64,000 bases of DNA, from sequence record MN871441.1; one strand, 5' to 3'. The position numbers and the translations under genes are program-made. Within the stretch, counting starts at the first letter, position 1. Every line of letters begins with the position of its first letter. The notes beneath the pieces were generated by a model that searched no databases, was not told where the DNA came from, and saw nothing but the letters and a program-made list of their open reading frames with translations. Positions 1 to 58,542 of this stretch are shown piece after piece.

Positions 1-51
1 CCATTTCTTCTTTGATTTTATCAAACATTTTTAATTTCCTTGATTTTAAAT

Positions 52-321
52 TTATTCGTTGATGACAACAACAAGACGGGAGTAACTGCTATACATATCA
101 TTGGATTTAGACCAAGACACCCCATATCCATCTTTGACCATACGCTCAACCAGTTCAGAACGGATCTCGGACGGGATGATCTCGTTTGGGATACTAACCG
201 TCACGTTATAGTCATTTGTCTTTTTGAGAAGATATTCATAAACGAAATTTAGTGCGTTTTGAATCAAAGCTTCTCGCTTCTCGGTGATCTTTTTGTGGAT
301 TTCGGAGCTTTTCATTTCCAT
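52..321 (-). CDS. hypothetical protein
   Basis: 89 aa ORF tiling with neighbours. Confidence 0.7.
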   Translation of the reverse strand: MEMKSSEIHKKITEKREALIQNALNFVYEYLLKKTNDYNVTVSIPNEIIPSEIRSELVERMVKDGYGVSWSKSNDMYSSYSRLVVVINE

Positions 322-51569: not shown

Positions 51570-52006
51570 ACTTCAATTTTACGACGCTCTTTTTTCTTCC
51601 CCATGACAGACGGACCTTTATCTGTAACAGAACCAGATTTTACCCCAGTTGCGATGTTTATCACATTACCCCCGGAATCACCAGCGATCATCTCTTCATA
51701 CAACATTTCAATCGTGTATTCTGATTGACCATATGATTCTGTTAAAGTGTCATATCCAGCCTTCACCGCCAACGATTTAGATACCGACTCGCCTCCATAC
51801 TTTTGAAGGTTTATTTTCAGTGATCTAATTGCTGCGTGAAATGATGTATACGCCGCTTTTTCTCTCACGGTTTCCGGCTTCTTAATAAACTCACCGGCTT
51901 CGTCGATAATACCGCGCTTGTATGCTTCCCAATTACGAAATGGTTTTCTTAATAGGTCTAGCATACGGACGGAATAAATCCCGTCCATAATAGTTTTAAT
52001 ACTCAC
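51557..52006 (-). CDS. T4 gp61.1-like protein
   Basis: C-terminal EEMIAGDSGG..IATG..KGP; position next to primase. Confidence 0.6.
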   Translation of the reverse strand: MSIKTIMDGIYSVRMLDLLRKPFRNWEAYKRGIIDEAGEFIKKPETVREKAAYTSFHAAIRSLKINLQKYGGESVSKSLAVKAGYDTLTESYGQSEYTIEMLYEEMIAGDSGGNVINIATGVKSGSVTDKGPSVMGKKKERRKIEVKAP

Positions 52007-52953
52007 GTTAAATCCTCAACAATAGAAAGTATATCATTAAGATTATCTTTGGTTACAGTTTCTGTGTTTCCAGAGAACAACCAATCACATACACCATTGT
52101 ATTTAGCTTTTATTTTGGACTCGATTATGAGTGGGAGATTTCCATCTTCAAATTGTTTCACCAATACACAATTAGAAACAACATTATGAATACCCTTAAT
52201 ATGTTCTTTCGAACGAATATCGGGATCTCTATTTGTTATCCCATATTTGTATACGGTATCATTATCTTTTGTATATTCAAAGATATAAAACCACCCAGAC
52301 TTTGATTTATCGTATCCAGAAGAAGCACAGCTTGGACAACCACTATCAGTGTTCACGATGGCTGAAAATGATTTCCTATGTAAACCATGTTTTGGACATT
52401 TATATAAAACCCATGTGTTCTGGTTTATGTATTCACCACCAACGAATTCAATAAATTCAACACCAAAACCTTCACATCTACTTTTTGCTGTATTATATGG
52501 ATCTTTGAATTTTTTCAGCCCCGATGTGTAATCGATTCCGCATTTAGAACATCGAGTACCTTTGTTAGAAAAGTTTGCATATGATACTCGATACTCACCA
52601 TGGGTTGGACAAATACATATCAACTTTGTCGTATTCGTCTTATATTCGCCACCAACAAATCCAACAAAAATATGGTTCCTGTTTTCTGATTTCAACAATC
52701 TTTTTATTATTATCGACCTCTGACGAGAATTTAATTGCGGGGATTTTGCACACCCACATGGGGTTTGTCCCAATTTAAAACTACCCTTAGTAGACCGAAA
52801 TCCATCAGGATATAATTCTGTATCCAATGAACATATTGAACATTCAGCCAGATACACCTTATTATGTGTCTTGGTTTTTCCAAATATACCAACCACAGTT
52901 AGTATCCCACCTTTTGGAGTGTCGAACGTAGAACCAATAAATTCGTCTTTCAT
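52003..52953 (-). mobile_element. free-standing homing endonuclease, paralog of 15403..16386
   Basis: ELYPDGF..PCGC..PQL, CPTHG..CSKC, CPKHG..CPSC; YIFEY..YKYGITN..SGNTE. Confidence 0.75.
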
Positions 52954-52993: not shown

Positions 52994-54334
52994 TTAATCC
53001 CAAGGGATATCTTCGTCAACCGATTGTTCTGCAAGGAGGTCATTAAAATCAACTTCGGTTTTGCTCATCCTTCGCTTGAACATAGAACTACCCATGGGGG
53101 TTGTGTCGATGACCTCTTCCATTTCTTGAGTTATCTCAACGGGGATCGATGTGATTTGGTCTCCTTGACGAACAATAACAGCATCCTCCTGAATATCCGT
53201 TTTCTCTTCCAAATCTTTGCGCTCAAACACAACAGTATATGGTGTTGTGTCGTCGAGATCTGACCACCTCATATAATTTTTCTGAACAGCCAGACAGAAT
53301 TTATTATGTGTGTTNATTCNNCTCGATAGCAAGTCCACGACCAGATCTTCATCTTCTGAAATTGCCAATACGAAGTCGCAACCATGAAGCAACGCAAACG
53401 AATCAGCGATATCCGCTTTATCAATCTCAAGAGAGCCAGAAGACCCACGGTTGGTTTGTGCACCAGACCATACAACAACTTTCTTCTCGATAGCAAGTCC
53501 ACGAACTTCTTCTGAAATTGCTTTAATGAAGGAGTAAGAGTTATCAGAGAACTTCATACGGGACGAAGCCATAATCCCTAGGTAATCACAACAGATAACA
53601 TCTGGCTTGAAACCTTTTTTCATTTCAAGCTCATCCATCAGGTTTCTGATGTGGTTTACGTTTGCCCCTGATGTTGGGAACTGCTTAACATAAAGCTTAC
53701 CAAGCTTTTTACCTGCAACCTTTTTGTTGAACCGGTTCATGAACTCAGATTTTTGGATAAGTCCACTATCTAGCTCGTCCAGAGTCAGGTCCATTAGGTT
53801 TGCGTCAATACGCTTACCTACAGTTTCTTCCGACATCTCAAACGAGACGTACAACACGTTTAACCCGAGTTGCATATACTCGGTTGCAAGGTGACACAGA
53901 CCGATAGACTTACCAACACCAGTACCGGCTAGAATAACGTTAAGCGTACCACGTTCAACCCCACCCTTGGTGATCCGGTTCAGCATATGATTCAGGAACG
54001 GGATCTTATTTGTCTTTTGGTTATATGCTTCCCAACGTTCTTCTGCGCTGTTCATATAATCATGACCAACNTCNANAGTAAAGCCAACAGACTNTAGNCT
54101 TNNTCATGATCTCTTNCATTGNCNCGATATTCTGTTTNNNTTCNNGTCNTGNNCATCCAGNGCNNNNNNCGATGGAGCTTTGTNANGNNTNTGGNTNCAC
54201 TNTGTATCAATCAAGTCAAATGCAATACGATAAGGTCCCTTAGAGAAATATTCGGATTTAAGAAAAGGGTACACCTTACCAAAATACTCGCCGTTGAAAA
54301 CGAGGTTATTGATAATAATTTGTGAAATACTCAT
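52994..54334 (-). CDS. 41: replicative DNA helicase (frame broken by N block)
   Basis: LAGTGVGKS Walker A, SFEMSEE, VKQFPT, CDYLGI, AQTNR. Confidence 0.93.
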
Positions 54335-54353
54335 TAAAAACACCTGTAAAAAG

Positions 54354-54411
54354 AAAAGTCGCTTACGTTAAAGATTATCCCATAACGTAAGCGACTTTTT
54401 AATTATTTATA
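54354..54411 (-). promoter_or_regulatory. T4 late promoter box followed by perfect 17-bp inverted repeat
   Basis: TATAAATA at 54404-54411; arms 54354-54370 and 54383-54399. Confidence 0.6.
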
Positions 54412-54880
54412 CAACCTTTTTCTGTGAGGAAAAATGAAGAATACCGGTATCATTCAGCACAAACGGTACATCGTCCTCGGTGATGATATGCATCCAGAAC
54501 CTAGCCTTATATTTGTATTGACGAACCCGTTTTACCCGGTTCACAACACCACCATCAGGAGTACAATATTGAGCTGCATATAGCGCCTGATAGGGGCTCT
54601 TGCGGTCATATAGACTCAGAACTTGATGGTTCTCTGCACACAACCAAGATTTCCCGTTAGACATATGGATTTCCCATACGTTGGGGTTGACCGGTTCTGT
54701 GAACTCCGTATCGACCATACGTAAGATCGTTGCGTATTTACCGGTTTCCGGCCCCTTTAGAAGGATCCGGTTACCCTGTTGAATCTCTAGGAGTTGATAT
54801 AGAGTCCATGTTTGTTCCCTCATGTCCCCGTAAATGTCGGGGGCACAAAAGGTAACAAGGGTATCCTCTGGAAATCCAGT
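54407..54880 (-). CDS. stand-alone Hint (intein-like) domain protein, degenerate
   Basis: frame extends to TGFPEDTLVTF (block A-like), EIHMSNG..LCAENHQVL (block B-like), MHIITEDDVPFVLNDTGILHF (block F/G-like). Confidence 0.55.
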   Translation of the reverse strand, partial: TGFPEDTLVTFCAPDIYGDMREQTWTLYQLLEIQQGNRILLKGPETGKYATILRMVDTEFTEPVNPNVWEIHMSNGKSWLCAENHQVLSLYDRKSPYQALYAAQYCTPDGGVVNRVKRVRQYKYKARFWMHIITEDDVPFVLNDTGILHFSSQKKVV

Positions 54881-55043
54881 TANNTNANAANATCANNANN
54901 ACGNNCNNAGNAAGATNTTTCNNTCNCGNCATTGNCNNNGTTATACATGNCNNGNNCNNNANNNNTAACATGNGGGTATAGTNCTTCCTNNANNTCNNNN
55001 TACATCATAACAATCATTACGGTCGCAGGTTTGTTCTGTCATT

Positions 55044-55338
55044 TTATTTCCTTTTGAAAAGATCAAGAAAACGCCCAAAGAAAGATTTTTCAATCTCGAC
55101 ATTGGCTTNNNTATACNTNNCTTGTACNGCATTTTTAANATGTGGNNNTAGTTCTTCCTTCANGTCNTNGTGTGNNNTACTNNNATCTNATACTAACCTT
55201 NNCATNATNATACTGTATNNCGTTGATNAACANNAGNAAATTCTCANTATCAATCNNNATAACNNNTTCNNTTTGNANANNNTNTAATNCNNNATNGATT
55301 ANATCTTTATAGGANANCTNCNTTTANTCCTNTTCCAT
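55044..55338 (-). CDS. 40: head vertex assembly chaperone (N-rich)
   Basis: KEELxPHxKNxV motif and position between uvsX and gp41. Confidence 0.65.
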
Positions 55339-55379: not shown

Positions 55380-55811
55380 TTATTTAGGGATGATACTAAC
55401 CTTGGCATTACAAGAGGCTGCAACAGGATAAACTATTTCATCAAAATACTTTTTATTTTGGAAACCATCTAATACCAAAAGATGACTATAGGAGAACCCT
55501 TTTAGTCCTAATGGATCTCTTACTAAGACGAAATACGATTCGTTTTCAAGTTTTATGTATTTTGAATTTGAGGCCAAAACGAATTCATCACCAAAAATAT
55601 TACCCAATTCTTTTAATTGATATTTTATCTCATTGAATATAGTTCCATTCATTGGTTCCATAACAATGGTTTTTCTCCCTTGGGAATGAAAATAACAATC
55701 ATGAACAGCAGCCGAAACTGGGGTATCCTGAACTCCGATGTGAGTCAAATAAAAACCATAGTCGTTACGAAGATTAATAAACAATTCTACTATTTCTTTT
55801 GTTAAATTCAT
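55380..55811 (-). CDS. hypothetical protein
   Basis: 143 aa ORF. Confidence 0.65.
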   Translation of the reverse strand: MNLTKEIVELFINLRNDYGFYLTHIGVQDTPVSAAVHDCYFHSQGRKTIVMEPMNGTIFNEIKYQLKELGNIFGDEFVLASNSKYIKLENESYFVLVRDPLGLKGFSYSHLLVLDGFQNKKYFDEIVYPVAASCNAKVSIIPK

Positions 55812-55814
55812 TCA

Positions 55815-56147
55815 TTAATTCTCATATGAACTAATTGTATAATTTCCCTCGAAATTTTCAATAACAGTATATCCTAAAGATCGCAATCGATTATTAGATA
55901 TCTCGACTATTTTTGAATATACATATGATACAGTGTGATTACATAGGTAAGGATTAAAATTCGTTTCGTGGTTGTGGATGATATTTACGTAATCATCCAT
56001 GTTTAGTGTTATTCCACCACCACAAACAACAAGCTCATTGATTATAGACCGCAAAACATGACTAGACTCAACGTCGAAATCGTGGTTTGTATATTTTATT
56101 TCTTTTCTAACTTCGTCGGCGGTAGTTTTTTCTGTTACAATTAACAT
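55815..56147 (-). CDS. hypothetical protein
   Basis: 110 aa ORF. Confidence 0.65.
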   Translation of the reverse strand: MLIVTEKTTADEVRKEIKYTNHDFDVESSHVLRSIINELVVCGGGITLNMDDYVNIIHNHETNFNPYLCNHTVSYVYSKIVEISNNRLRSLGYTVIENFEGNYTISSYEN

Positions 56148-56189: not shown

Positions 56190-57299
56190 TTAACCGAACA
56201 ACTGGTCAACTTCATCAAACACTTCCTGAGATACTTCAACTGCTTTCAGTTTGTATGCATCAGACACAGCATCCATAAAAGGCTTGTGAGAAAACATAGG
56301 TTTCCAGAATTCCAGAGAGTTGGAATCCTCTTCTGTCCATTTCTTTTCATCATCGGTGATCAGATACATCTCACCAGTTTCGAGGTCGAGATAATTGCGC
56401 TGATAACGTGCGTTTTGTGGTTTGGTAACAAAACCAAGTTCTTGTGCAATCTTTAGCAAACCTGAGTATGTATTAATACCACCTTGGAAGGAAACTTGCA
56501 AGTCCAATTTGGATTTTTCTTTGATAGTGCGACTCTTTTCCGCATTCATCACAAAGTTATAACCCAACAGCTCTTTGCCATCTTTGTCCTGTTGCTTACC
56601 AAGAATGATAACGGTGTCAGCGGAATACATCGGTCCGGTGCCGCCACTCATAACAGTTTTGCTGTACATCTCTTGGGTTTCGTATGTGTGGTTTACAGCA
56701 ATACACGGAATGTCATTAACAGTCAGGTAAGGGGTAACCATACGGAACAGACTCTTGATCTGCTTTGCTCGGGTCATATCCTGTGCAGACTTTTCATTCT
56801 TCGCATCTTCAAGTTCTTTCTTAGAAGCAACGTTACCGATAGAGTCAATATAGATAATAACCTTATCACCACGTTTGACTGCTTCCAGTTTCTTAACGAT
56901 ATCGAATTTAAGTTCTTCTACGTCAATAAACGGACAATGTACAACCCGGTCAATATCTACACCTTGAGAAGTAAAATAATCAGGAGTAGAACCGAATTCA
57001 TTATCAAAGAACAGACAAACTGCATCCGGATACTTACGAAGATAAGCAGAAACCAGAACCAAACTCAGGTTAGATTTAAAGTGTTTAGACGGTCCGGCAA
57101 TACAAGTTAGACCCGGCTTCAAACCACCATCAAGATGACCACTCAACATCAGGTTAATGATCGGGACACGAGTCCGGATTACATCCTTGTCGTTAAAGAA
57201 AACGCTATCGGATAGCATAGAACTCATTTTATTTGAGGAAGTACCAGACAGACGTTCCAGAAGGGCACCAGTATTAACCGTTTTTGCTTTTTTAGCCAT
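56190..57299 (-). CDS. uvsX: RecA-like recombinase
   Basis: AGPSKHFKS, FDNEFG, IDSIGN, DMTRAK, SGGTG. Confidence 0.96.
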   Translation of the reverse strand: MAKKAKTVNTGALLERLSGTSSNKMSSMLSDSVFFNDKDVIRTRVPIINLMLSGHLDGGLKPGLTCIAGPSKHFKSNLSLVLVSAYLRKYPDAVCLFFDNEFGSTPDYFTSQGVDIDRVVHCPFIDVEELKFDIVKKLEAVKRGDKVIIYIDSIGNVASKKELEDAKNEKSAQDMTRAKQIKSLFRMVTPYLTVNDIPCIAVNHTYETQEMYSKTVMSGGTGPMYSADTVIILGKQQDKDGKELLGYNFVMNAEKSRTIKEKSKLDLQVSFQGGINTYSGLLKIAQELGFVTKPQNARYQRNYLDLETGEMYLITDDEKKWTEEDSNSLEFWKPMFSHKPFMDAVSDAYKLKAVEVSQEVFDEVDQLFG

Positions 57300-57366: not shown

Positions 57367-58542
57367 TCAACCAAACAAGTCATCCAGTGAAAAGTTCGCA
57401 GGGCTTTCTTGTTTCCACCCAATAGCATCACAGATATTACCAAGTGGCTTTTGGAAGTGTTTACAATACATACCAACGAAATCAATATCCTTTTCTGGGT
57501 TAATTCCGAATTCGTCGGGGATCTTATCACCGGAGGGCCAAGCAATAGTTTCGATATGATATTTATTCGGAACCTTCAACATTGCATACTGAATTTTTTC
57601 ACCAGAACGGATTGGGTCAACGTAGGATACCGATTTCAACTGATCACAAATCTTGTTGTAGTTAATAGCTGCTTTAACGTGACCGGGACAACCAGATTTA
57701 TGATTGAAAAATTCGTCTGAGTTCTTTTCAATATTATTTGCGCTACTTACTTGCGCAATCTTGCGATAGTCCTGTTTTGGATATTCACCCTTTACCTTGT
57801 CAACGTGAGCATGGAGATTCGTTTCATTCTCAGTCAAAATGATGTCAATCGCTTTTTCAAGGCATTCTGACGCAAAAGGTGGTGTACTGCTACGGCGGGT
57901 CTCGATACCCATAATCTTGAGCTTTGGAACTACATTACCATGAGAGTCTAGCTTTCTCTTACCTTCGTTATCCCACACAGATAGAGCATATCGTTTCTTA
58001 GCGGTCCAGAACCCACGAGTTGCGATCACTTCACGGTCCATGAACAATTTATGGTCGAAATAGTTCATGTAATCTTTCAGTTCGCGATAACATTCATCGA
58101 TATATGGTTCAACCATATTCTTTGCGAACTTATCAAGCATATCAACCCATTTAATAGGTTCGACATCCTCAATCTTAACGCCTTTCTTGTCTGCCATCAT
58201 TTTAACGAAGTTTTCAACACAAACATATTGAGAGTCGGTATCACAATAGATAACGTAATCTACGTCTTCTGTGTTACACAGCTTATTGAAATACTCGTTC
58301 GTTTTTCTGGCAATCCATTTAATGGATAACTGACCACCCATCGTAATTGATTCTGCCATTCGTAGATCATAATAACGACCCACAGGATGACCCAAAGACC
58401 CATAAAGAGAGTTGATCAATACCTTTTTTGCTTGTTGGGTTACGTTACATACTTTCTCATATTTCCGACAGTCAGAGATGAGCTTTTTCAGCTCATCGTC
58501 TGTCATATTTTCCAATTGTTCATCGGTATAATCTAGATTCAT
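57367..58542 (-). CDS. 43: DNA polymerase C-terminal subunit (gp43B)
   Basis: KKVLINSLYG, YCDTDS, KKRYAL, KIMGIET. Confidence 0.95.
   Translation of the reverse strand: MNLDYTDEQLENMTDDELKKLISDCRKYEKVCNVTQQAKKVLINSLYGSLGHPVGRYYDLRMAESITMGGQLSIKWIARKTNEYFNKLCNTEDVDYVIYCDTDSQYVCVENFVKMMADKKGVKIEDVEPIKWVDMLDKFAKNMVEPYIDECYRELKDYMNYFDHKLFMDREVIATRGFWTAKKRYALSVWDNEGKRKLDSHGNVVPKLKIMGIETRRSSTPPFASECLEKAIDIILTENETNLHAHVDKVKGEYPKQDYRKIAQVSSANNIEKNSDEFFNHKSGCPGHVKAAINYNKICDQLKSVSYVDPIRSGEKIQYAMLKVPNKYHIETIAWPSGDKIPDEFGINPEKDIDFVGMYCKHFQKPLGNICDAIGWKQESPANFSLDDLFG

What the first reader, a model, noticed from the sequence alone, without database searches (positions are those of the whole stretch)
54407..54880. 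Stand-alone, apparently dead Hint (intein-like) domain just upstream of the gp41 helicase
Seen: extending the ORF 19 codons upstream gives TGFPEDTLVTF (intein block A-like, Cys1 replaced by Gly), WEIHMSNGKSWLCAENHQVL (block B-like TxxH region) and RVKRV..MHIITEDDVPFVLNDTGILHFS (block F/G-like, no terminal His-Asn). It ends with its own stop and has no visible extein or endonuclease. Known: DnaB-type helicases are common intein hosts. Inference: a domesticated intein relic or a binding module. The true start is hidden by Ns.
Basis: partly seen in the sequence, partly recalled or inferred. Interest (0 to 1): 0.68.

Follow-up and report, generated by a model that had tools for sequence, protein, structure and literature searches.

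The report
Stand-alone dead intein-fold phage gene
A small gene between head-chaperone gene 40 and helicase gene 41 of a T4-like Aeromonas phage encodes a complete intein-type (Hint) fold that has lost almost every splicing residue and has no host protein around it, yet is kept by selection, so it looks like an intein domain reused for a still unknown, non-splicing job.

Summary
The window is GenBank MN871441.1 (Aeromonas phage AsSzw2, Ceceduovirus), an unverified record full of scattered Ns.

- **The gene.** In 20 related phage records and several metagenome contigs it is an intact 171-175 aa ORF (phrog_16672, function unknown), always between gp40 and gp41.
- **The start.** It is visible at 55042 (MTEQTCDRNDCYDV). 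It is cut off from the body by a 120-nt N-riddled copy of the 3' end of gp40, found only in this record. The same N clusters break essential gp41, so this is almost certainly a record error.
- **The fold.** An AlphaFold model was compared with 48,161 PDB chains. Ranks 1-33 are all Hint folds (Z up to 9.6) and the best other fold scores Z 3.1. Model residues 16-165 match intein residue 1 to the last residue.
- **Catalytic residues.** Cys1 is Gly, the block F Asp and His are gone, and the terminal His-Asn is gone. Only the block B His remains.
- **Selection.** It is purifying: 11 of 11 differences are synonymous, and dN/dS is 0.09-0.13.
- **Function.** Unknown. I read it as a non-catalytic binding module.

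The scan reached the same reading earlier on sister records (s1-158592).

The parts
54407..54880 (-). Body of the Hint-fold gene: residues 15-171 of the 171-aa protein plus the TAA stop (54409..54407). G16 is at the intein position-1 site, H99 is the block B His, and F164-S165 stand in place of His-Asn.
   Evidence: sequence and family; fold; residue mapping.
54881..55000 (-). 120-nt insert, 45 of its bases N. It is a copy of the last ~117 nt of gp40 and has in-frame stops. It separates codon 14 from codon 15 of the gene. It is present only in MN871441.1 and is probably a record or assembly error.
   Evidence: The 13 other Ceceduovirus records (14 carry this protein, counting the window's own) and the Logan contigs that carry the intact ORF all lack it.
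55001..55042 (-). True start codon (ATG 55042..55040) and the first 14 codons, MTEQTCDRNDCYDV. The ribosome-binding site AAGGA lies inside the end of gp40. The start is 1 nt after the gp40 stop.
55044..55338 (-). gp40 head vertex assembly chaperone (PF11113, phrog_999). In this record it carries 58 Ns and 4 extra bases, so no gene was called.
54348..54400 (-). Intrinsic-terminator-like hairpin between the Hint gene and gp41: an A-run, a 17-bp stem, then UUUUCUUUUU. The structure is conserved across the family but the sequence is not.
   Evidence: -25.3 kcal/mol, z -5.8; hairpin plus U-run in six other family loci, five with different sequences.
52994..54334 (-). gp41 DnaB-type replicative helicase, the downstream neighbour. 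In this record it lacks 198 nt and 27 nt relative to relatives and has an in-frame TGA, all inside N clusters.

Best explanation
**Shown.** The gene encodes a 171-aa free-standing protein. Residues 16-165 form a complete intein-type Hint (Hedgehog/intein) fold, with a 15-residue leader and a 6-residue tail instead of exteins, and no endonuclease domain.

Nearly all splicing residues are replaced in every family member:
- the position-1 nucleophile is an invariant Gly;
- the block B Thr is Ala, Cys or Pro;
- the block F Asp is His or Asn;
- the block F His is Val, Lys, Arg or Gln;
- the penultimate His is Phe, Val, Tyr or Gly;
- the terminal Asn is Ser, Pro or Ala.

Only the block B His (H99) is kept. 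The gene is a fixed feature of Emmerichvirinae-type phages. It always sits 1-5 nt after gp40 and is followed by a terminator-like hairpin before gp41. It is under purifying selection, although it diverges much faster than its neighbours.

**Inferred.** It cannot splice or self-cleave, and it acts as a pseudo-enzyme. I read it as a stable beta-rich binding or adaptor module, made early with the uvsX-gp40 transcription unit. Its family-specific insertions are the likely contact surface: the confident segment at about residues 26-48, and the conserved DTE[FW]..P loop at 71-80. The partner is unknown. Candidates are gp40, gp41 or other replication and recombination proteins, or a host protein.

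In this particular record the gene looks interrupted, but that is most likely a sequence error.
For: **Fold**
- The AlphaFold2 model has pLDDT 64 and pTM 0.58.
- The Foldseek top 50 are all inteins, BIL or Hedgehog domains.
- VIA-align gives Z 8-9.9 over 117-134 residues, with model 16..165 matching intein 1..last in more than 15 entries.
- In the exhaustive search of 48,161 chains, ranks 1-33 are all Hint folds and the best non-Hint chain scores Z 3.1.
- The ESM Atlas model matches intein-bearing proteins at TM 0.67-0.74.

**Weak sequence support, all at block B**
- The family profile's best PDB hit is the gp41-1 intein (E 0.11).
- The only PF14890 hit in the phage 65 genome is this ORF (E 0.026).
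- hhalign to a canonical Lak-phage mini-intein aligns H99 with its block B His.

**Dead residues:** alignments.

**Selection**
- Window against CC2: 11 nt differences, all at third positions and all synonymous.
- dN/dS is 0.13 (CC2 against P0003) and 0.09 (P0005 against phage 65).

**Synteny:** gp40-Hint-gp41 in every locus examined.

**Terminator:**

**Distribution**
- 20 of 2,611 phage records with a gp41 homologue carry it.
- Both genera of the subfamily carry it.
- Aeromonas phage 31 has gp40 overlapping gp41 with no such ORF.
Against: - No partner or activity was tested.
- The model has only middling confidence, and both termini are below pLDDT 50. Equivalence of the last three residues therefore rests on alignment, not on a confident structure.
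- No Pfam, NCBIfam or PDB sequence hit reaches significance, so homology with inteins is inferred from structure.
- H99 and H163 are invariant. This could point to a residual or new chemistry rather than pure binding.
- The protein evolves fast: 34% identity between CC2 and phage 65, against 86% for gp41. That fits a host-directed accessory role at least as well as a role in the replisome.
- As deposited, the window copy is interrupted. If that were real, the gene would be dispensable in this phage.
Confidence: 0.7

Rival explanations
1. It is a host-directed accessory protein for host takeover or counter-defence. The Hint fold would be just a stable scaffold, and its position next to gp41 would be incidental.
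For: - It evolves much faster than its neighbours: 34% identity against 54-90% for them.
- It is mildly acidic, with pI 5.5.
- The family is small and lineage-restricted: 7 clusters among 5.8 billion proteins and 3 true representatives among 1.84 billion.
- The uvsX-gp40 stretch is plastic, with optional small ORFs.
Against: - There is no match to defence-related models.
- Its position is rigidly fixed between gp40 and gp41 in all members, while nearby ORFs come and go.
Confidence: 0.25
2. It binds and modulates a neighbouring gene product. The partner would be gp40, to which it is translationally coupled, or the gp41 helicase downstream.
For: - The gap after the gp40 stop is 1-5 nt in all members, and the arrangement with gp41 is invariant.
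- Helicases and polymerases of T4-like phages are known intein hosts (PMC2677866; PMC11923092).
Against: - Tight gene spacing is the rule in T4-like genomes.
- A terminator-like hairpin separates it from gp41.
- The gp59 helicase loader is present, so no loader is missing.
- There is no sequence relation to gp41.
- The complex prediction could not be run.
Confidence: 0.2
3. It is still an autoprocessing Hint domain that uses unconventional residues. For example, it might cleave off its 15-residue leader, or act like a class 3 intein or a BIL domain.
For: - H99 (block B) and H163 are invariant.
- Class 3 inteins and BIL domains show that position 1 need not be Cys (general knowledge; class 3 structures appear among the hits).
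Against: - No nucleophile is conserved at position 1, in block F or at +1.
- Position 15 varies (T, N, A or C).
- There is no terminal Asn or Gln.
- There are no exteins to join.
Confidence: 0.05
4. It is a decaying intein remnant or pseudogene with no function of its own.
For: - The catalytic residues are lost.
- The copy in this record is interrupted.
Against: - 11 of 11 substitutions against CC2 are synonymous, and dN/dS is about 0.1.
- Length is held at 171-175 aa with intact frames across members down to 29% identity.
- The interruption lies in N clusters that also break essential gp40 and gp41.
Confidence: 0.03

Closest known systems
Mini-inteins of phage or viral origin (VidaL 6vgv, gp41-1 6qaz/6riz, NrdJ-1 8ubs) and other mini-inteins (RadA, DnaB, DnaE)
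   Same: - The same Hint horseshoe over the whole domain: Z 8-9.9, 117-134 aligned residues, termini in register.
- The same size class, with no endonuclease domain.
- The block B His is retained, and block A, F and G-like hydrophobic patterns are recognisable.
   Different: - It is not inserted in a host protein.
- The position-1 nucleophile, block F Asp and His, penultimate His, terminal Asn and +1 nucleophile are all replaced.
- There are two family-specific insertions (about residues 26-39 and 74-79) and a shorter segment before block F.
- Sequence identity is only 7-18%.
Bacterial intein-like (BIL) domains and the Tetrahymena BIL2 domain (2lwy, 6y75/6tmm)
   Same: They share the Hint fold (Z 7.1-7.4), and they are not mobile inteins.
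   Different: BIL domains sit inside larger proteins and keep residues for N- or C-terminal cleavage. This protein stands alone and keeps none of them.
Hedgehog C-terminal autoprocessing (Hog) domain and Vint domain (1at0, 8r2c)
   Same: Hint fold (Z 6.0).
   Different: They are more distant structurally. They keep Cys1 and process an N-terminal cargo. Here no conserved frame relation to gp40 would allow a fusion: the gap is 1, 2, 3, 4 or 5 nt in different members.
phrog_16672 (PHROGs, function unknown)
   Same: The window protein is a full-length member (E 2e-95, profile positions 15-171 of 171).
   Different: The family carries no annotation. Its Hint fold is not recorded there or in Pfam.

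Membership tests
Intein (protein-splicing element) | Hint (Hedgehog/intein) beta-horseshoe fold | tested here: met
   Ranks 1-33 of 48,161 chains are Hint folds, with Z up to 9.6. The next fold scores Z 3.1.
Intein (protein-splicing element) | Inserted in frame within a host protein (N- and C-exteins) | tested here: not met
   The gene has its own start and stop, with a 15-aa leader and a 6-aa tail. gp41 begins at the usual T4-type N-terminus, and gp40 ends with its own stop. There is no similarity to gp41.
Intein (protein-splicing element) | Nucleophile (Cys, Ser or Thr) at position 1, or a class 3 block F Cys | tested here: not met
   G16 is invariant at the position that aligns with intein residue 1. 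There is no Cys in block F.
Intein (protein-splicing element) | Block B TxxH motif | tested here: inconclusive
   The His (H99) is invariant and aligns with the block B His of the gp41-1, DnaE and Lak-phage inteins. The Thr position is Ala, Cys or Pro.
Intein (protein-splicing element) | Block F Asp and His; block G penultimate His, terminal Asn (or Gln), and a +1 Cys, Ser or Thr | tested here: not met
   - Block F Asp is His or Asn, and block F His is Val, Lys, Arg or Gln.
- The penultimate His is Phe, Val, Tyr or Gly.
- The terminal Asn is Ser, Pro or Ala.
- The +1 residue is Ser or Ala.

Source. The model is of low confidence at these last residues.
Intein (protein-splicing element) | Protein splicing or cleavage activity | not testable with these tools
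   This needs expression followed by mass spectrometry.
Pfam Hint-type families (PF14890 Intein_splicing and relatives) | HMM score above the curated cut-off | tested here: not met
   P0001 has no hit even at E 10. One member reaches E 0.14 for PF14890. A six-frame scan of phage 65 gives 11.6 bits against a cut-off of 35.8.
Bacterial intein-like (BIL) domain | Embedded in a larger protein, with conserved residues for N- or C-terminal autocleavage | tested here: not met
   The ORF is free-standing, and no conserved nucleophile or Asn is present.
phrog_16672 | Full-length HMM match | tested here: met
   E 2.3e-95, 318 bits.

The most novel reading that the evidence does not exclude
The dead Hint protein would be an exapted pseudo-intein, descended from an intein of the replication genes of Aeromonas T4-like phages. 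It would now work in trans as a non-covalent regulator or adaptor of the replisome or of head initiation, through the gp41 helicase, the split 43A/43B polymerase, or gp40. That would be the first functional, non-catalytic, free-standing Hint domain described in a phage.
Probability: 0.12. Interest if true: 0.75.

Novelty: new variant of a known kind. Interest (0 to 1): 0.45.

Why it matters
Inteins are usually treated as selfish elements whose Hint domain exists only to splice itself out. Here a complete Hint fold has no host protein and no catalytic set, yet it has been kept by purifying selection at a fixed place in the replication and recombination cluster of a whole phage subfamily. This is a clean natural case of an intein-type domain turned into a pseudo-enzyme.

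It gives intein biologists a tractable system, because CC2, phage 65 and their relatives are cultivable. It can be used to ask what a Hint fold can do besides self-processing.

It also gives phrog_16672 a fold annotation. Neither Pfam nor PHROGs recognises the family as Hint, and three full-text literature searches found no description of such a phage gene.

The interest is limited by the unknown function and by the narrow distribution of the family.

Tried and rejected
- **Sequence family searches.** Pfam, NCBIfam, PADLOC and PDB sequence searches gave no significant hit.
- **Large protein searches.** They found only the family itself. P0007 and P0008 were repeat or low-complexity noise.
- **Second Atlas query (P0009).** It gave nothing usable.
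- **Resolving the N stretch from reads.**
  - Read laying cannot take Ns.
  - On the N-free 54210-54880 stretch, contigs of four runs match at 99% or better and run over both ends, but what follows is not shown.
  - No Logan contig of the AsSzw2 sample was found through the neighbouring 143-aa ORF.
- **N positions as strain polymorphisms.** This explains only a minority: 7 of 57 N columns are polymorphic among relatives.
- **gp40-Hint fusion by frameshift or read-through (Hedgehog-like cargo processing).** Rejected, because the frame relation differs among members.
- **Hint as a replacement for the gp59 loader.** Rejected, because gp59 is present.
- **Extein remnants or similarity to gp41.** None found.
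- **T4 late-promoter motif TATAAATA over the stop codon.** It is not conserved in other members.
- **gp41 genes with an intein in the phage collection.** None appeared among the 60 sampled rows.
- **Literature searches for stand-alone or inactive phage Hint proteins.** Nothing relevant was found.

Full report
**What the window is**

The stretch is identical, Ns included, to GenBank MN871441.1, 'UNVERIFIED_ORG: Aeromonas phage AsSzw2' (Straboviridae, Emmerichvirinae, Ceceduovirus), a record without annotation. The 64-kb window holds 1,051 scattered Ns in about 50 clusters. All genes discussed here lie on the minus strand, in this order:
- split polymerase 43A/43B
- uvsX (56190-57299)
- two small optional ORFs
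- gp40 (55044-55338)
- the finding
- gp41 (52994-54334)
- an endonuclease ORF

**Checking the observation**

The three quoted peptide stretches, the gene's own stop codon (TAA 54409..54407) and the position 72 nt upstream of the gp41 start are all as described. The 157-residue translation of 54410-54880 matches phrog_16672 (function unknown) at E 2e-95, over profile positions 15-171 of 171. So only 14 residues are missing at the front.

In phage CC2 the orthologue is a 171-aa hypothetical protein (F485_gp013, YP_007010270.1) that begins MTEQTCDRNDCYDV-TGFPED. Those 14 codons and their ATG are present and N-free in the window at 55042..55001. Between them and residue 15 lie 120 nt with 45 Ns and in-frame stops. 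This insert is a copy of the last ~117 nt of gp40.

Only MN871441.1 has the insert. The 13 other Ceceduovirus records lack it, and every one of the 20 assemblies and Logan contigs that carry the exact 171-aa protein has a continuous ORF. The neighbouring N clusters in the same record carry further lesions:
- 4 extra bases in gp40;
- a missing 198 nt and a missing 27 nt in gp41;
- an in-frame TGA in gp41.

As a result, neither essential gene is called whole in this record. A viable T4-like phage cannot lack its replicative helicase, so I take the interruption to be a sequence error and not biology. I could not prove this from reads. Read laying does not accept Ns. On the N-free part it only showed near-identical contigs in four runs that run over both ends.

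**The fold**

Sequence methods alone leave the protein open:
- no Pfam hit even at E 10;
- nothing significant in the PDB;
- nothing in NCBIfam or PADLOC.

An AlphaFold2 model built on a six-sequence family alignment has pLDDT 64 and pTM 0.58. Residues 21-70 are the confident part, and both termini are below 50.
- **Foldseek against the PDB.** It returns inteins, BIL domains and Hedgehog autoprocessing domains for all 50 listed hits.
- **VIA-align re-alignment.** It gives Z 8-9.9 with 117-134 aligned residues. In more than 15 entries it places model residues 16..165 on intein residue 1..last.
- **Foldseek-independent search of 48,161 representative chains.** Ranks 1-33 are all Hint-fold proteins (inteins, BIL, Vint, Hedgehog; Z 9.6 down to 3.3). 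The best chain of any other fold scores Z 3.1.
- **ESM Atlas model of the same sequence.** It matches only intein-bearing proteins, at TM 0.67-0.74 over 143-158 residues.

Weak sequence signals agree, and all fall on block B:
- the family profile's best PDB hit is the gp41-1 intein (E 0.11);
- the only PF14890 signal in the whole phage 65 genome is this ORF (E 0.026);
- hhalign against a canonical mini-intein found in the Lak-A1 megaphage aligns H99 with its block B His.

**Dead or alive**

Seven family members, with 29-80% identity to the window protein, were aligned with each other and with the Lak mini-intein.

| Intein position | Residue(s) in this family |
|---|---|
| Residue 1 (Cys, Ser or Thr) | G16, invariant |
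| Block B Thr | Ala, Cys or Pro |
| Block B His | H99, invariant |
| Block F Asp | His or Asn (145) |
| Block F His | Val, Lys, Arg or Gln (152) |
| Penultimate His | Phe, Val, Tyr or Gly (164) |
| Terminal Asn | Ser, Pro or Ala (165) |
| +1 residue | Ser or Ala |

There is no block F Cys of the class 3 type. With no nucleophile, no Asn and no exteins, neither splicing nor the usual N- or C-cleavage is possible. The register of the last three residues rests on alignment and on the end-to-end structural ranges, because the model is poor there.

Relative to the mini-intein, the family has insertions at about residues 26-39 and 74-79. The second carries the conserved DTE[FW]..P motif with invariant E73 and P80. 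The family also has a shorter segment before block F.

**A kept gene, not a wreck**

- **Substitutions.** Between the window and CC2, the 474 coding bases differ at 11 sites, all at third positions and all synonymous. dN/dS is 0.13 for CC2 against an 80%-identical relative, and 0.09 between two phage 65-type members.
- **Length.** It stays at 171-175 aa with open frames down to 29% identity.
- **Divergence.** The protein diverges far faster than its neighbours. Between CC2 and phage 65, identity is 34% for this protein, against 54% for gp40, 86% for gp41, 90% for UvsX and 84% for primase. Its pI is about 5.5.

**Distribution and context**

The family is very small: seven 90%-identity clusters among 5.8 billion proteins, and three true 50%-identity representatives among 1.84 billion (the two longer hits are repeat noise). 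In the phage collection it occurs in 20 records, all Aeromonas phages of Ceceduovirus and Ishigurovirus. By comparison, 2,611 records carry a gp41 homologue.

In every locus seen, including three divergent metagenome contigs, the order is uvsX ... gp40 - Hint - gp41. Elsewhere gp40 abuts or overlaps gp41, for example in Aeromonas phage 31.

The Hint start lies 1-5 nt after the gp40 stop. The frame relation varies, so a conserved gp40-Hint fusion by recoding is excluded.

After the Hint stop comes a strong hairpin plus U-run (-25.3 kcal/mol, z -5.8). Hairpins with U-runs are present at the same place in all six other family loci examined. One of them (L013) has almost the same sequence, and the other five have unrelated sequences. 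I infer that the gene closes the uvsX-gp40 transcription unit.

These phages have a gp59 helicase loader and no recognisable intein elsewhere in the genome. Inteins do occur in the replication genes of related phages:
- split inteins in gp41 of cyanophage-like loci (PMC2677866);
- the Aes123 PolB1 split intein of T4-like Aeromonas salmonicida phages (PMC11923092).

The model is no closer to these than to other inteins, so a specific origin is not established.

**How it most likely works**

Shown:
- a complete Hint fold;
- loss of the catalytic set;
- purifying selection;
- fixed synteny.

Inferred: the protein acts without chemistry, as a binding or adaptor module expressed early with uvsX and gp40. 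The family-specific insertions are the probable interface. The partner is open. My rough odds are:
- about 0.25 that the protein is host-directed;
- about 0.2 for gp40 or gp41;
- the rest for other roles.

Residual autoprocessing (about 0.05) and a functionless relic (about 0.03) are unlikely. No binding test could be run.

**Comparison and novelty**

The protein works like no characterised Hint protein. It fails the membership test for inteins on four of six testable features, and it fails the test for BIL domains. It is a member of the Hint fold superfamily and of phrog_16672.

Three full-text literature searches found no description of a free-standing, catalytically dead, selected Hint gene in a phage. 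The ESM Atlas does list clusters of 160-170-aa Hint-only proteins in phages, giant viruses and bacteria, so the general kind exists in databases. I rate this a new variant of a known kind, of moderate interest.

The same scan had already reached this reading on sister records (s1-158592 and s1-161399). My tests were run independently and agree.

Noticed in passing
window 54071-54202, 54883-55000, 55109-55332, 53315-53321 (and about 50 other N clusters): The public record MN871441.1 itself carries the scattered Ns. Around this gene the N clusters coincide with a 120-nt duplication, 4 extra bases in gp40, 198-nt and 27-nt gaps, and an in-frame TGA in gp41. None of these is seen in relatives. Only 7 of 57 N columns in gp40 are polymorphic among relatives, so a simple two-strain consensus does not explain them.
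   Followed up: partly
window 52003-52953 (-): A 316-aa ORF with three CapR-homology domains plus DUF723, matching phrog_681 'endonuclease'. It is a free-standing homing-endonuclease-like gene directly after gp41. It is present in the window, AS-zj, Asswx_1, Aszh-1 and one metagenome contig, but absent from CC2, AS-sw, AS-yj and P19.
   Followed up: partly
window 55380-55811 (-) and 55815-56147 (-): Two small ORFs between uvsX and gp40: one of 143 aa (phrog_20104, unknown function) and one of 110 aa (no family). They are present or absent in different near-identical relatives, so this stretch is a plastic insertion zone.
   Followed up: no
window 57367-58542 (-) and upstream; L001:1-1543: The DNA polymerase is split into abutting 43A (about 507 aa) and 43B (391 aa) genes without any intein halves. 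Related Aeromonas salmonicida T4-like phages carry a PolB split intein (PMC11923092). Phage 31 also has a '43-B' fragment.
   Followed up: no
L018:3089-5128 (Aeromonas phage Assk, MH791404.1): A 679-aa gene is called after the Hint ORF where relatives have gp41 (520 aa) and then a separate 149-aa ORF. The span suggests a gp41 fused with that downstream ORF, either a real fusion or a sequencing or annotation slip. No Pfam hit was on record for this product.
   Followed up: no
L031:1381-1860 (Prevotella phage Lak-A1, MK250015.1): A canonical-looking mini-intein (CLLPNEE ... IVNHN|S) lies in a 159-aa stop-to-stop frame. Three further PF14890 matches in this megaphage lie in frames with many stops under table 11, which fits its known alternative code or split genes.
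   Followed up: no
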